Shown here piece after piece: positions 10,524-59,620 of a DNA stretch of 64,000 nucleotides. Position 1 is the stretch's first letter. Each line of letters begins with the position of its first letter. The notes beneath the pieces are model-generated. The model saw nothing but the letters and a program-made list of their open reading frames with translations, ran no database searches and was not told the DNA's origin. Origin of the DNA: Haliotis cracherodii (taxonomy: Eukaryota); the NCBI RefSeq assembly GCF_022045235.1, contig NW_027266297.1:19344001-19408000 (forward strand), in the 5' to 3' direction. The position numbers and the translations under genes are program-made.

Positions 10524-10941
10524 ATGGAGGAAATCAAACTACCAACCAAAGCTCCAGGGTCTTTGCGAAATAAGACATTAGGGAGACTGACGGGAACAAA
10601 GCAGCCACAGGGTGCAGGTAAGCGCCAGACATGGCACGGCCCAAGGCCACCTACTCCGGCACCAGCTCCAGTCCCGAAGCCCAACCTGACTTGGGAGCCC
10701 GGGATGTTCAACCTGGACTACATCATCAGGAACCTGTACCTGCCCCGTGTGGTGATTTGCGACCACAGTTTCTGTGACCTGGGAAGGGGGACCATGGGGT
10801 TCGACTGTGGGCAGCTGCTGATGCTGCAGAGTAAGAAGGATGGGTTGAAGGTGGCTGCCAGTAGTTTGGCCGTGGACTCTCGCGATGGGAAGACCCTGCT
10901 GGAAACGGAGAACAGCCTGCTTATTCCCGAGGATTACAAAG
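10524..10941 (+). CDS. g1 coding exon 1: CABIT-domain protein (GAREM/THEMIS/Serrano-like), N-terminal part; spliced product about 829 aa
   Basis: ATG at 10524; LTWEPGMFNLDYIIRNLYLPRVV..LLIPEDYK G|GTCGGT donor, phase 1; homologous to exon 1 of g2-g5; upstream acceptor CCTTTCCAG ends at 10491. Confidence 0.88.
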
Positions 10942-11415
10942 GTCGGTACCTATTGCTAAACCTGAATCTGAATGCATGGTACATGTATTTCTGGTGAATT
11001 GCTGCCCGAGCCTATTTCGAAATATATTATCACATATCATAATATATTATGCTCAGTAAGACGGTAGACGCGTAGCTGTCTAAAAATGATGTCATACCCG
11101 GTAGATAGAATTGAGTAGACAATGTGGGTGTCAAAACTTCGAAACAGGAATTACCCAAACCTCGTTAGACTGGACTCCCGTTATGGAAACACCGCTTTCC
11201 GGGCCACACTCTTTGGAACGTCTTCATATGATATAAACTATAAGGACTTAATTCCGTAACATCATTCGTTTGTCCCAAAATATGTTAACCCAAACCCTTT
11301 CACTGGAAAAAGGCATTGCCCGAGAAATATTCTGGGGATATAGAGGCATGTTTGTTTACGTTGCATTGCATTTAATAATCAATTCCAACCACCCAAAAGT
11401 AGTCAGTCAGTATGT

Positions 11416-11904
11416 TATTATAAGGGTAACGCTATTTTTCAGGGCATTATCATTTGCAGAAATCCGAGGTCTTCCATTGACTGCCCGACGAAGGAGTGCA
11501 GTTTAAAAGACCGAGGGCTTCTGCATATGATAATGCCCTGAAAAATAGCGTTACCGTTATTATAGCTAAAATGGTTGGAATTTGTTATCAAATAAAAAGA
11601 AACAACAATATCGGTTTTGAAGCATTTACTGCATCAACTTTTACAAATATGGAAACGTCATAGAACAAACCAGATGACGTCACTATTGAACGTGACGTCA
11701 CCTATCCCTATCCGATGACGTCACCCAACAACGGGCGTGATAATGGCCCGTCGTCAAGCAATCTGAGGGCATTATCAAGTTACAGTGGCCCGCTCTTTTC
11801 TCATAACATGCGGGCGGTTTAATGATAATTCTATCCATTTTAGTTATAATATCTGATAACATGCGGGCGGTTAAATGATAATTCTATCCATTTTAGCTAT
11901 AATA
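11416..11904. mobile_element. Fold-back or non-autonomous DNA-transposon-like element in the g1 intron
   Basis: About 57-bp inverted arms (11417-11473 vs 11507-11564); a second inverted pair TATTATAGCTAAAATGG / CCATTTTAGCTATAATA; and a roughly 50-bp tandem duplication at 11803-11903. Confidence 0.6.
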
Positions 11905-11951
11905 TATGATATATATCAAAGCTTTCATGTCTTGTTTTTTTTATTCTACAG

Positions 11952-56386: not shown

Positions 56387-57949
56387 AACAGGAATAGGAT
56401 TTTGTAGGACACTGCCAATACAAAATAATTAAAAAAACCTATGACGTCCTACAAGGGACACTGATCATGACGCGTTGTCAAAAGTGACAAAATTAACCAA
56501 AGCGTGACATGGCGACAATGCGACTACTCAACATACAAATGATTAAATTACAACATTACACAAAATTGTTACGTTAAAAAACGTCAATTGAAGGCAAGAA
56601 CAGAGTATTTTATTCATAATGAAATGTATTCGTATAAAACCGGGAAGTATTTTGACTCCAATGAACGTAGTTGCTCAAATGTGTAAATATTTATATGTAT
56701 TTATGAAGGTAGCGGAGGTAAGTCACAATACATCAAAGGGCAGCTTGTGTGTAAAGACTTGTCCCCACAATGTAGATGTAATACGCACTTTTGCCCCATA
56801 AAGATCTCTTTGCATGCATACGTGAGCATCAATAATGACACAATTCTTGTTTTGCAGCATAATGAACAGGTTCTGTCATAAAAGAGACACATTGCTGCAA
56901 GTATCAAAAGCTTCAATATTATTTGTCCTATGCACGTTTCTTTCTTCACATTTAAGGTTTCCCTTTCAACATTTAAGAATTTTTTTTTTTTTTTTTTTCA
57001 AAATCTTAATACTTTAATGTTCACAGTATGTCCAGTACGGTTGCGATGAATTTGGTTCAGTAAATTTAAGAAGAATGAAATGGTCATTTTCGTAACATCA
57101 ACTATAGAGCGGGAAGTTTTGATGACAAAAAGGTTAATGAAAAAACTATAACGCATACACCAATGACAAATGTGTACATGTACGAGTTTGACGTAATTAC
57201 CCCTTGCTATGCATATGAGCATCTATGATTGCTATTACGGCATTGACTTGAAGGAATTATTATAGTAATCGTAATGGATATAGGACAGTAATAATATACT
57301 TAAAAAACAGTCATACAAATGTTCTTTATGATAAATGCAAAGTAGTATAAATGAGTTAACATTAATAACAAGAGAAAAATAAGATTTTACACTGACTTTC
57401 ATTAGGGTAACAGGAAAAACAAACATAAGGTTTGTCAGATGCAGGTGCTTGAGGGTTATGAGCATCAACGATAAGACTGTTATATATCGTCATGGCATTG
57501 GTGCGTCTGTTTATTCTAACATTTATATGAAAACGAGGATACCGACGCCCTCTTTGTCATTGATACTCCGTGATCACTTGGTAAGAACGGATGTCGGTAG
57601 CCGTGTTGCTGTTGCAGGAATATGTAACGTATTGGTCTTAACCAAGCTCTCTCTTAATTATAACGTTCTTTTTTCTATGGTCAACGTAATGTATACTGCT
57701 TTCAAAAACATCCACCGGATCATGGTAATATCTGACGACATTTTACCCAAACCCTGATTGTTATTAAATTCAAATGAATATTTGGCTATGTTTACAAGCA
57801 ACATTTCACACTGTAGCATTGCACCCGAGCAAGAGCTAATGATTAAAATGTTCGTTCGTCACACAGTGTATCGATATTCTGACCAAACATATGGTACACA
57901 TTGCCAGGAAGTACGTTTTACATAACTCTGATTAGTTAGGTTCATTGAC

Positions 57950-58165
57950 GTGCGTCCCTTGGGAACGCCAGAAACCTATGGTTCGCCCCGATTATGTTTC
58001 TAGGTTTGTCAGCACCATACCCGTGCTCGTGGGTTTCACCGAAGTGGTAAACGTCTGAGACGTGCATCACTTCGGGCTTTCCTCCCACATTAAGCTGACA
58101 CGCCGTGATATAACTGGAATACTGTTAAAAGCGGCGTTAAACCCAACTCACTCACTCACTCACTC
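57950..58165 (+). mobile_element. 5'-truncated SINE family B in the g5 intron
   Basis: Family B body and tail; TSD TCATTGACGTGCG. Confidence 0.9.
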
Positions 58166-58340
58166 ATTGACGTGCGGTATGTTCTCTTACAAATACTCTC
58201 TTAGATGTCAGTCAAGGGCTGCAACCAAATTCGCTGACATTAACAGACAAGTAAATTAGATTGACGAGGTTCCATTGTATGCACACCCCTTAAGCTACTT
58301 CTGAGTTACAATCAGTTTCACAAAGTTTGTCTTCTTTCAG

Positions 58341-59620
58341 GATGGTTTGCTGTCTCATCCATGCCTAAACATGAGCCTGTTCCCCAGTACCGCCTGGTGG
58401 CGAAACTTGCCGCTTCAGATTGCCACACGTTTCTTATAGGTGGAGAAGATGAAGTGATTGCATTGCAGGCGTTCAGTAAAACTCAAACCCAAAAAACAAG
58501 AGTTCTCTACCCTGGCGATGTCCTCACAGTTGTTAACTTGTATGTGGCTACAATCAAAGTAAGAAAATCCATATTTTTTAGAACCATCACTCGGGAAGAG
58601 ACATTTCTTCTATGTACAGACAATGCTGATCGACAGGTGCTCCTACCCATTGATGCCACAGGGGTTTTCTATGTCCTCAAACACAAGACCGAAAAACTTG
58701 AGTTTCCTGTCTTGCAAATTAAGGATATCGTTGCTGACATCAGACTACCCTGCGTTGCCAGGTTGTTGTATGGACATGTCCCTGTAACCCCATGTGTATT
58801 TACTGGGACGTTGAGGCTGAGCGAATGTCACCATGATGTTTCAGTTGTGACGTCCTCAGTGTTCAACCAATGTAATATACTCTTAGAGCTCCCAGTTGCT
58901 ATTCCGCTGATGTTCAGGGTTGCCAAACCAGACAGGTCTGTTTCCGACAGTGCTCAATATAAATATGCTTTAAGGCAGTGCCAAGAGGGAATGGAAACAT
59001 ATATGAGAAGTATCAAAGTTTCCCAGGAGCCGGCCTCCCATACTGACTGTGACACGTTTCCAGTATATGACAACGTACCTCCTCCATTGCCCCCAAGAAC
59101 ACGAACAGGTCCTCCAGATGTATTACCCAAGCCTACTGGGAGAACACAAACGCAGACTACTCCTGAGGCCTGTTGTCCAGATAGCAGCAACCGTGACGCT
59201 GATTATATACAGATGTGGTTTAATCCACAGGCGCCCCCAACTCCGTCAAAATGTGAAAACTTCAGGGACCTTCCAAGCGTCCCAAAGACGACAGCAAGGC
59301 AAAGTTCTATAACCATTAGCACCACAAATGACTACCTCACAATGCAAAGGTTTCCCCAGGACGCAGCTGTCGACACAGACTTACAGGTTGCCAGTCTTGT
59401 AGACAAGATTAACTTGTGGCAGCGTAGGATCATATCTAGGCAGGGTGGTTCCAGTTCTGGGTCATTGAATGGCGCAACTATAACGAGACCTGATGACTTC
59501 ACGTACTCTGAAATAGGAGGCCATGCTGGGATGAGTGGTGCGACGAACCGGCCAGCAAGGAGACAGGAGACTGGAACAGTGTATGAAAACATCGAGACCC
59601 TCAGACAACTCAGGAACTAA
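58341..59620 (+). CDS. g5 coding exon 2: CABIT remainder plus a shortened tail with no SAM
   Basis: Acceptor TTTGTCTTCTTTCAG|GA TGG TTT GCT GTC is in frame with ORF 58361-59620; LYPGDVL..FLLCTD..QVLLPI..GVFY; ends TVYENIETLRQLRN*. Confidence 0.92.

What the first reader, a model, noticed from the sequence alone, without database searches (positions are those of the whole stretch)
10524..59620. Tandem array of five diversified CABIT-domain (GAREM/THEMIS/Serrano-like) signalling adaptor genes
Seen: five same-strand two-exon genes with the intron at the identical phase-1 position, all with intact frames and canonical splice sites. They share a roughly 300-330-aa folded N-terminus (W..YSL..IL..LP.VV / LLIP.DY.GWF / PHY..V..LA / L.PGDVL / LxC / VLLP...G.FY) and have very different disordered tails. 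Established: this pattern with an LxC cysteine is the CABIT domain of THEMIS, GAREM and Drosophila Serrano, which are usually low-copy adaptors linking tyrosine kinase signalling to Grb2 and SHP phosphatases. Inference: a lineage-specific invertebrate cluster in which one docking module is paired with five different phosphotyrosine output tails, possibly for haemocyte/immune or growth-factor signalling. I do not know of such a cluster being described, but I cannot search.
Basis: partly seen in the sequence, partly recalled or inferred. Interest (0 to 1): 0.85.

Follow-up and report, generated by a model that had tools for sequence, protein, structure and literature searches.

The report
Abalone tandem cluster of GAREM-like adaptors
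Five neighbouring two-exon genes in the black abalone genome are real, diverged copies of one GAREM-type signalling adaptor (a CABIT domain plus a tyrosine-rich tail); this is a tidy lineage-specific gene family expansion, not a new kind of system.

Summary
The window is Haliotis cracherodii, chromosome piece C34:19.344-19.408 Mb. It carries five + strand, two-exon genes. In all five a phase-1 GT..AG intron splits the Gly codon of ...DYK-G-WF.... Four spliced models equal RefSeq 'uncharacterized' proteins; the fifth has a 565-aa H. asinina ortholog. All reach Pfam CABIT above its cut-off (37-56 bits, cut-off 24). AlphaFold models give a confident 320-residue beta-rich domain and disordered tails.

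New here:
- Only gene 3 keeps the SAM.
- The five copies group within the gastropods and have orthologs in H. rubra and H. asinina, so the array predates that split.
- Exon 1 of genes 3-5 is homogenised by gene conversion (93-94% nt, dS about 0.2), while exon 2 has diverged (68-70% nt, dS about 1.1).
- The tails are not wholly different: genes 3-5 share five short motifs.
- More CABIT genes flank the window.

All three N gaps lie outside the exons. The signalling role is inferred. Interest is moderate.

The parts
10524..10941 (+). g1 exon 1 (ATG up to the first base of the split Gly codon; donor GT at 10942-10943)
   Evidence: Identical to the N-terminus of P0032.
11952..14023 (+). g1 exon 2: rest of the CABIT domain, then a 477-aa Ser/acid-rich tail, then the stop. 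No SAM.
   Evidence: CABIT 37 bits on exon 2 alone; 56.4 bits full length. All 4 tail Tyr are conserved in H. asinina and H. rubra.
19490..19754 (+). g2 exon 1
   Evidence: The H. asinina ortholog P0036 has the same SYE-G-WF junction.
20894..22329 (+). g2 exon 2: the most divergent CABIT, then a 265-aa acidic tail with 9 Tyr (DYVNL, DYLHP, DYLTP, DYEVP)
   Evidence: Exon 2 alone has no Pfam hit. Ortholog P0036 scores 37 bits for CABIT. 8 of 9 tail Tyr are conserved.
28610..28919 (+). g3 exon 1
   Evidence: N-terminus of P0008.
28648..28929 (+). Gene-conversion tract in g3 (exon 1 minus its first 13 codons, plus about 10 nt of intron)
   Evidence: 93-94% nt identity to 44706-44987 and 54640-54914. 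dS 0.19-0.26 here against 1.0-1.2 in exon 2.
32069..32246 (.). Assembly gap inside the g3 intron. It is not in any exon.
   Evidence: Continuity across it is not verified by reads.
35278..37640 (+). g3 exon 2: rest of the CABIT domain, a 480-aa disordered linker (15 Tyr, including YENI and four DV[IV]YE[SP] repeats; 7 PxxPx[RK]), then the SAM and the stop
37410..37619 (+). SAM domain of g3 (residues 815-884 of P0008)
44665..44977 (+). g4 exon 1 (conversion tract 44706-44987)
   Evidence: RNA-like contigs stop aligning at 44978.
45608..46953 (+). g4 exon 2: rest of the CABIT domain, then a 220-aa tail. No SAM, no YxN.
   Evidence: RNA-like contigs start at 45606 with 18 further unaligned letters. 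Intron bin 45392-45575 has depth 0 in the three RNA-like runs but is covered by the DNA-like run.
52258..52385 (.). Assembly gap in the g4-g5 intergenic region
53286..53415 (.). Assembly gap in the g4-g5 intergenic region, 1.2 kb upstream of the g5 ATG
54632..54902 (+). g5 exon 1 (conversion tract 54640-54914)
58341..59620 (+). g5 exon 2: rest of the CABIT domain, then a 197-aa tail with YDNV, a PPPLPPR stretch and a C-terminal YENI. No SAM.
60705..61039 (+). Degenerate relic of the first part of an exon 1 (52 bp at 81% and 24 bp at 92% to g3 exon 1, split by about 260 bp holding a GGTT microsatellite)

Best explanation
The region is a tandem array of five paralogous genes for cytoplasmic scaffold proteins of the GAREM type, in the black abalone.

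Shown:
- Each protein has one N-terminal CABIT domain followed by a long disordered tail whose tyrosines are conserved between abalone species.
- The ancestral molluscan gene had the layout CABIT, then a linker carrying Yxx[VM]W and YEN[IV] motifs, then a C-terminal SAM.
- g3 keeps all of that. g5 keeps both motifs but has lost the SAM. g4 and g1 keep only Yxx[VM]W. g2 has replaced the tail with its own acidic tail carrying YxN and YxxP motifs.
- The duplications happened in the gastropod line that leads to Haliotis, before H. cracherodii, H. rubra and H. asinina split.
- g3, g4 and g5 are the youngest trio. Their exon 1, which encodes the first half of the CABIT core, is kept nearly identical by gene conversion while exon 2 and the tails diverge.

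Inferred, not shown: as in GAREM and THEMIS, tyrosine kinases phosphorylate the tail. The phosphorylated YxN sites then recruit the Grb2 SH2 domain, the Pro-rich stretches bind SH3 domains, and the CABIT domain or ITIM-like tyrosines engage an SHP-type phosphatase. On this reading the copies couple one shared docking domain to partly different outputs, and only g3 could link to other proteins through a SAM.
For: Gene structure and identity to RefSeq proteins.

CABIT membership:
- Pfam CABIT scores g1 56.4, g3 40.9, g4 54.8, g5 50.4 and the g2 ortholog 37.0 bits, against a cut-off of 24.
- The Cys of LxC is invariant and at least 90% conserved across 61 family members.
- AF2 models have residues 11-330 at pLDDT above 90.

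SAM. The SAM is found at the C-terminus of family members from chiton, limpets, caenogastropods and bivalves.

GAREM layout (one CABIT, a proline-rich region, a SAM): PMC4082722 and PMC8086153.

Phylogeny: with names. One clade for all Haliotis copies is not rejected (p-AU 0.58).

Orthologs in H. rubra and H. asinina.

Gene conversion:
- 282-bp tracts at 93-94% nt identity, against 68-70% in exon 2.
- dS 0.19-0.26 in exon 1 against 1.04-1.24 in exon 2.
- Species-specific residues are shared across paralogs (M vs L; A vs D vs S). H. cracherodii g4 lacks the 2-codon deletion that its own orthologs carry.

Transcription and intron removal for g4.

Tail Tyr conservation: 4/4 in g1, 8/9 in g2, 10-11/15 in g3, 3/7 in g4, while tail identity is 54-73%.

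Motif distribution across the family.
Against: - No binding, phosphorylation or tissue data exist for any of these proteins. The Grb2 and SHP steps are borrowed from vertebrate GAREM and THEMIS.
- No vertebrate GAREM, THEMIS or Drosophila Serrano sequence was among the 150 best family hits, so orthology to GAREM rests on domain layout and on the SAM match, not on a tree.
- That LOC64762 (2dkz) is GAREM1 is from my memory; no tool confirmed it.
- No solved THEMIS CABIT chain was in the structure libraries, so no direct superposition was possible.
- RNA evidence covers g4 only. The runs are only guessed to be RNA. The junction is inferred from where contigs stop and restart, not read letter by letter.
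- The positions of g1 and g2 within the gastropods are unresolved (open forks, long branches 0.9-1.4).
- The low dS in exon 1 could partly reflect constraint on synonymous sites.
Confidence: 0.8

Rival explanations
1. Some copies, especially the SAM-less and fast-evolving g1, g2, g4 and g5, are redundant duplicates drifting towards pseudogenes. On this view the array has no diversified function.
For: g1 and g2 sit on long branches (0.9-1.4 changes per site). Exon 2 of g2 alone falls below the Pfam threshold. g4 keeps only 3 of 7 tail Tyr in H. asinina. A decayed exon-1 relic lies downstream of g5, so copies do die here.
Against: All ten exons are open with canonical splice sites. g1-g4 have intact orthologs in species that split after the duplications. 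CABIT identity between orthologs is 75-90%. Pairwise dN is well below dS among g3-g5 (dN 0.26-0.32 against dS 1.0-1.2). Tail Tyr are kept more often than tail residues in general. g4 exons are present in RNA-like contigs.
Confidence: 0.1
2. The array is a dedicated immune or haemocyte signalling module, the reader's suggestion: the copies diversified under pathogen pressure, by analogy with THEMIS in lymphocytes.
For: Only the analogy with THEMIS and THEMIS2, plus the lineage-specific expansion with fast-evolving tails.
Against: There are no tissue or challenge expression data. The closest layout is that of GAREM, which is a growth-factor (EGF receptor) adaptor that is ubiquitous or neuronal in mammals (PMC8086153). 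The proteins have one CABIT domain, not the two of THEMIS.
Confidence: 0.1
3. Assembly artefact: the five copies are mis-assembled haplotypes or collapsed repeats around the N gaps, and there are not five real loci.
For: There are three N gaps in the region. Exon 1 of g3-g5 is near-identical.
Against: Exon 2 identity between copies is only 31-61% at protein level and 68-70% at nt level for the closest trio. Separate orthologs of g1, g2, g3 and g4 exist in other species' assemblies, and the H. rubra ones lie on one 609-kb contig. The gaps lie in an intron and in intergenic DNA.
Confidence: 0.02

Closest known systems
Vertebrate GAREM1/GAREM2 (FAM59A/B)
   Different: There are five tandem copies, against two dispersed ones in mammals. 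Four copies have lost the SAM. The tail motifs differ: YEN[IV] and Yxx[VM]W here, against LPpYEEL at Y453 in GAREM1 (PMC8086153). No binding data exist. Orthology has not been tested on a tree.
THEMIS / THEMIS2
   Same: CABIT domain with a discontinuous core and an inserted SH3-like head carrying the conserved buried Cys. A disordered tail used for Grb2 binding.
   Different: THEMIS has two tandem CABIT domains and no SAM. These proteins have one (a single domain hit per protein). THEMIS proteins were not among the 150 best family hits.
Molluscan 'CABIT domain-containing protein' genes (for example Lottia V4CCG7, Pomacea C0Q70_16632, Saccostrea LOC133177019)
   Same: Same subfamily: 36-50% identity in the CABIT domain, the same C-terminal SAM, and YEN[IV] in many of them. 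All are uncharacterized.
   Different: At 50% clustering, most species contributed one representative to this clade (Gigantopelta possibly two), against five lineages in Haliotis. Copy numbers in those genomes were not counted directly.
Drosophila Serrano (sano)
   Same: An invertebrate single-CABIT cytoplasmic protein (from my memory of the literature).
   Different: Not compared here. No Serrano sequence was obtained, and its reported role in planar polarity and tracheal tube length gives no direct guide.

Membership tests
CABIT domain family (Pfam PF12736) | Profile match above Pfam's gathering score | tested here: met
   Full-length g1 56.4, g3 40.9, g4 54.8, g5 50.4 bits; g2 ortholog P0036 37.0 bits; cut-off 24. 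Exon 2 alone scores 26-40 bits for g1, g3, g4 and g5, and has no hit for g2.
CABIT domain family (Pfam PF12736) | The conserved cysteine for which the domain is named, lying in the SH3-like head | tested here: met
   The Cys of the LxC motif is invariant in the five genes (column C92). It is at least 90% conserved in 61-72 family members. In the P0001 model it is Cys196, in strand 186-197 of the head.
CABIT domain family (Pfam PF12736) | Two-subdomain, mostly beta fold: a core built from the N- and C-terminal segments, with an inserted SH3-like head carrying a long hairpin | tested here: met
CABIT domain family (Pfam PF12736) | Direct superposition on a solved THEMIS CABIT structure | not testable with these tools
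   No THEMIS chain came up in the Foldseek PDB search, in VIA-wide or in the PDB sequence search. Entries 9i3p and 9iaz were published after the library's cut-off date.
GAREM type (CABIT, Pro/Tyr-rich linker, SAM) | A single N-terminal CABIT domain | tested here: met
   One scoring domain per protein. Domain at residues 11-330.
GAREM type (CABIT, Pro/Tyr-rich linker, SAM) | A C-terminal SAM domain | tested here: inconclusive
   Met for g3 only. Absent from g1, g2, g4 and g5: tblastn with the g3 SAM finds only g3 in the window and in the whole genome, and their frames end in disordered sequence. Present in the ancestral molluscan family.
GAREM type (CABIT, Pro/Tyr-rich linker, SAM) | Tyrosine phosphorylation of the linker, with Grb2 and SHP2 binding | not testable with these tools
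   Only motifs are seen: YxN in g2, g3 and g5; PxxPx[RK] in g1, g3 and g5; Yxx[VM]W in g1, g3, g4 and g5.
GAREM type (CABIT, Pro/Tyr-rich linker, SAM) | Orthology to vertebrate GAREM on a tree | not tested
   No vertebrate sequence was among the 150 best hits and none could be fetched by reference.
THEMIS type | Two tandem CABIT domains | tested here: not met
   One CABIT domain per protein.

The most novel reading that the evidence does not exclude
The exon-confined gene conversion is functional, not incidental. Under this reading, selection keeps the exon-1-encoded half of the CABIT core identical in g3, g4 and g5 because all three must dock on the same upstream partner. Exon 2, the tails and the SAM are free to diverge. 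That would give a natural 'one input, several outputs' adaptor set, and it would point to the still unknown ligand-binding face of the CABIT domain.
Probability: 0.25. Interest if true: 0.55.

Novelty: new member of a known kind. Interest (0 to 1): 0.38.

Why it matters
CABIT proteins (THEMIS, GAREM) are poorly understood adaptors. The fold was solved only recently and its ligand is still debated.

A natural series of five paralogs could guide experiments on which parts of a GAREM-type scaffold do what. The series shares one domain, differs in SAM presence and in identifiable Tyr motifs, and has one half-domain held identical by gene conversion.

The result also shows that molluscs carry many CABIT genes: at least 11 loci on one abalone chromosome. 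Even so, this is an ordinary lineage-specific expansion of a known, already annotated family, so the general interest is moderate.

Tried and rejected
Searches were run exon by exon by reference, or with database proteins that turned out identical to the spliced models.
- The joined g2 protein was never built or searched. Its H. asinina ortholog P0036 stood in for it.

No orthologous DNA was obtained, so synteny and the DNA-level test of concerted evolution across species could not be done.
- Read laying allowed one call, so only g4 was laid on reads. The g3 intron gap was not checked with reads.

Searches that gave nothing:
- A sequence search of PDB with g3 exon 2.
- Pfam SAM models on g3. 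Three homologs gave sub-threshold SAM hits of 12-19 bits at the matching position.
- Foldseek against PDB for the CABIT domain, nothing at E 0.001 or better. The top rows (toxin binding domains, arrestins, thioesterase) have TM below 0.15 and I treat them as noise.
- The search of earlier findings.
- The founding CABIT paper (PMC2908989) is not held.
- A literature search for 2DKZ / LOC64762 gave no confirmation of the gene name.
- ARAGORN found no tRNA in the window.

Not attempted:
- Complex prediction. No abalone Grb2 or SHP sequence was in hand, and binding that depends on phosphotyrosine is outside what it tests.

Considered and rejected:
- Assembly artefact: the copies are too diverged and have separate orthologs.
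- THEMIS-type membership: there is a single CABIT domain.
- Purifying selection alone as the cause of exon-1 identity: the dS contrast and the species-specific residues shared across paralogs argue against it.
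Full report
**Where we are.**
A protein search with exon 2 of the fourth gene returned a 100% identical 552-aa RefSeq protein of Haliotis cracherodii, the black abalone. The genome tool places the window at G000:C34:19344001-19408000 on a 73.4-Mb chromosome.

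**The observation.**
Stop-to-stop frames, Met positions and splice motifs give five + strand genes of two coding exons each:
- g1: 10524-10941 / 11952-14023
- g2: 19490-19754 / 20894-22329
- g3: 28610-28919 / 35278-37640
- g4: 44665-44977 / 45608-46953
- g5: 54632-54902 / 58341-59620

Every exon 1 ends with the first G of a Gly codon followed by GT. Every exon 2 follows a pyrimidine-rich tract and AG. The intron is therefore phase 1 and lies inside the same Gly of ...LLIPEDYK-G-WFAV... (SYE-G-WF in g2).

The exon lengths add up to 829, 566, 890, 552 and 516 codons. The database proteins P0032, P0008, P0001 and P0005 equal my models for g1, g3, g4 and g5. For g2, a 565-aa H. asinina protein (P0036, 74% identical over exon 2) shows the same junction.

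tblastn finds exactly five exon-1 and five exon-2 copies, alternating, plus a short decayed exon-1 fragment downstream of g5.

**The gaps.**
The gap at 32069-32246 lies in the 6.4-kb g3 intron. The other two lie between g4 and g5. None touches an exon or a reading frame. I could not lay reads across the g3 gap. That g3 exon 1 and exon 2 belong together rests on three things:
- the RefSeq model P0008;
- the H. rubra ortholog P0009, which has the same composition and shares the g3-type STEQSN signature in exon 1;
- a 3615-nt RNA-like contig that carries an exon-1 match followed by 2.6 kb that does not lie on g4.

**Transcription.**
- In three runs guessed to be RNA, contigs cover exon 1 up to 44978 and restart at 45606. 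The restarted records carry 18 further unaligned letters upstream, and the exon-1 record carries 9 downstream.
- The unique intron bin 45392-45575 and the 900 bp upstream of exon 1 have depth 0 in these runs.
- A fourth, DNA-like run covers both of those stretches and has contigs running from intron into exon.
- One RNA-like contig spans all of exon 2 and about 280 nt beyond the stop.

This fits a spliced g4 mRNA, but the junction letters themselves were not shown. The exon-1 contigs may also come from paralogs.

**What the proteins are.**
- Pfam CABIT (PF12736, cut-off 24 bits) scores 56.4 (g1), 40.9 (g3), 54.8 (g4) and 50.4 (g5), and 37.0 for the g2 ortholog. Exon 2 alone already passes for four of the five genes.
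- The Cys of the LxC motif is invariant in the five genes. It is at least 90% conserved over 61-72 relatives.
- AlphaFold2 models of g3 and g4, built with family alignments, have residues 11-330 at pLDDT above 90. That region is almost all beta and ends in a long helix. The tails are below 50.
- Foldseek finds no solved whole-domain relative. That is expected: the THEMIS CABIT2 crystal paper calls the fold novel, and the THEMIS cryo-EM entries postdate the library.

**GAREM-like, not THEMIS-like.**
- Each protein has one CABIT domain.
- The last 70 residues of g3 fold with pLDDT of about 95 into a small helical bundle.
- Foldseek's only confident hit is 2dkz, the SAM domain of human 'hypothetical protein LOC64762' (probability 1.00, TM 0.73).
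- A profile of the family alignment hits 2dkz at E 6.3e-11, with SARM1 and polyhomeotic SAMs far behind.
- From memory, Gene ID 64762 is GAREM1/FAM59A. I could not confirm this with a tool, although the atlas lists a chordate 'GRB2-associated and regulator of MAPK1' cluster among the structural neighbours.
- The same C-terminal domain ends the relatives from a chiton, limpets, Gigantopelta, caenogastropods and bivalves, with sub-threshold Pfam SAM hits in three of them.
- One CABIT, a proline-rich region and a SAM is the published GAREM layout (PMC4082722; PMC8086153).
- In the array, only g3 has the SAM.

**Evolution.**
- A profile of the five exon-2 CABIT parts finds 288 cluster representatives at E 0.001 or better. 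The named ones are all invertebrate, mostly molluscs plus some crustaceans.
- In FastTree and IQ-TREE trees, the five genes and their Haliotis orthologs fall in the gastropod part of one mollusc-wide subfamily, sister to the bivalve sequences.
- g3, g4 and g5 form a well-supported clade (99-100). Within it each of g3 and g4 pairs with its H. rubra and/or H. asinina ortholog.
- g1 and g2 have their own orthologs and long stems. Their place among the gastropods is unresolved.
- Forcing all Haliotis copies into one clade gives a slightly better likelihood (p-AU 0.58). A single Haliotis-line origin is therefore compatible with the data but not proven.
- The H. rubra orthologs of g1, g3 and g4 lie on one 609-kb contig.
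- A genome-wide profile search finds 11 CABIT loci, all on chromosome C34. Three more lie near the window, at 19.315 Mb (+, same GWF intron site), 19.322 Mb (-) and 19.479 Mb (+). These three belong to older subfamilies with their own orthologs elsewhere.
- The shared intron position is thus ancestral to the family, not special to the five.

**Concerted evolution of exon 1.**
Among g3, g4 and g5, exon 1 is 83-90% identical in protein against 57-61% for the CABIT part of exon 2.
- At DNA level, a 275-282-bp block is 93-94% identical, while exon 2 is 68-70%. The block starts 13 codons into exon 1 and ends about 10 nt into the intron.
- Synonymous divergence is 0.19-0.26 in exon 1 against 1.04-1.24 in exon 2.
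- Across species, residues are shared by paralogs within a species rather than by orthologs. H. cracherodii has PMLLY and VGAPLL in all three copies. H. rubra and H. asinina have PLLLY. H. rubra has VGDPLL in both of its copies.
- H. cracherodii g4 lacks the two-codon deletion that marks g4 in the other two species, and instead matches g5.
- Gene conversion confined to exon 1 is the simplest reading. Exon 1 encodes roughly residues 20-105, the first half of the CABIT core.

**The tails.**
- The tails are 197-559 aa, disordered, rich in Pro and Ser, and acidic.
- They evolve faster than the CABIT domain (54-73% against 75-90% identity between Haliotis species). Their tyrosines are kept: 4/4 in g1, 8/9 in g2, 10-11/15 in g3, 3/7 in g4.
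- Two motifs are old in the family. YEN[IV], a pYxN site of the kind the Grb2 SH2 domain binds, occurs in limpets, caenogastropods, bivalves, g3 and g5. Yxx[VM]W occurs in chiton, Gigantopelta, caenogastropods, g1, g3, g4 and g5.
- GY[LM]T[VM], KINxW and FTYSE are confined to the g3-g5 clade. In both models they form a low-confidence hairpin plus helix.
- g3 adds four DV[IV]YE[SP] repeats and seven PxxPx[RK] sites. g2 has its own DYVNL and three DYxxP sites.
- The pattern is stepwise loss and gain on a common scaffold, not five unrelated tails.

**Mechanism.**
- Shown: domain layout, conservation, duplication history, gene conversion.
- Inferred from GAREM and THEMIS biology: tail tyrosines are phosphorylated downstream of a tyrosine kinase. 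pYxN recruits Grb2, Pro-rich stretches bind SH3 domains, and CABIT or ITIM-like sites engage an SHP phosphatase. SAM-bearing g3 can additionally link to other proteins through its SAM. None of this was testable here.

**Novelty.**
The genes are already annotated, as 'uncharacterized protein' here and as 'CABIT domain-containing protein' for relatives. No paper in the held library mentions CABIT together with molluscs. The array is a new, undescribed member set of a known family. Its most interesting detail is the exon-limited conversion next to the loss of the SAM.

**Limits.**
- There was one reads call only.
g2 was never searched as a joined protein.

Noticed in passing
G000:C34:19315210-19315860 (+, L016), 19322397-19322975 (-, L019), 19478988-19479413 (+, L021); also 19.02, 4.30, 30.29, 38.68 and 40.51 Mb: Further CABIT genes flank the window. 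Across two whole-genome searches, every CABIT locus detected lies on the same chromosome, C34 (11 in the profile search). L016 has the same G|WF intron site. L016 and L019 pass Pfam CABIT (36 and 35 bits). On the tree these loci belong to older subfamilies, not to the five-gene clade.
   Followed up: partly
window 60705-60755 and 61016-61039: Two fragments, 81% and 92% identical to consecutive parts of the start of g3 exon 1, lie 1.1 kb downstream of the g5 stop. They are split by about 260 bp that holds a GGTT microsatellite. This looks like the relic of a sixth exon 1.
   Followed up: partly
window 1-1957: A 61-bp satellite of 32 copies at 94% identity, with very strong G over C strand bias (GC skew 0.87). 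The long 'ORFs' on the minus strand here are an effect of the repeat.
   Followed up: no
window 46864-47600: An extremely high-copy repeat just downstream of g4, with summed contig depth of 10^4 to 10^6 in every run laid. Loose ends read like a tRNA T-arm (GGTTCGAATCCCGG), which suggests a tRNA-derived SINE. ARAGORN calls no tRNA here.
   Followed up: partly
window 20466-20724, 31668-31850, 55376-55634, 57951-58164: The introns of g2, g3 and g5 share a repeat of about 200-260 bp at 74-89% identity. A second repeat (19837-19953, 56252-56368, 47004-47094, 30880-30945) is also shared. These are probably dispersed elements, not remains of the duplication unit.
   Followed up: no
window 6449-7451, 22454-22862, 25418-27501, 47971-48662, 51172-51885: The intergenic spacers of the array are full of minisatellites (periods of 43, 26, 35/70/139, 58 and 31/92 bp). 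The 51.2-51.6 kb array is C-rich and accounts for the GC-skew dip there.
   Followed up: no
P0008 residues 510-552; P0001 residues 449-491 (window about 36495-36623 and 46640-46768): The tails of g3-g5 share a predicted beta-hairpin (GY[LM]TVP) followed by a helix (LVDKINLWQR), at pLDDT 45-65. It is found only in the Haliotis g3-g5 clade and could be a small binding module.
   Followed up: partly
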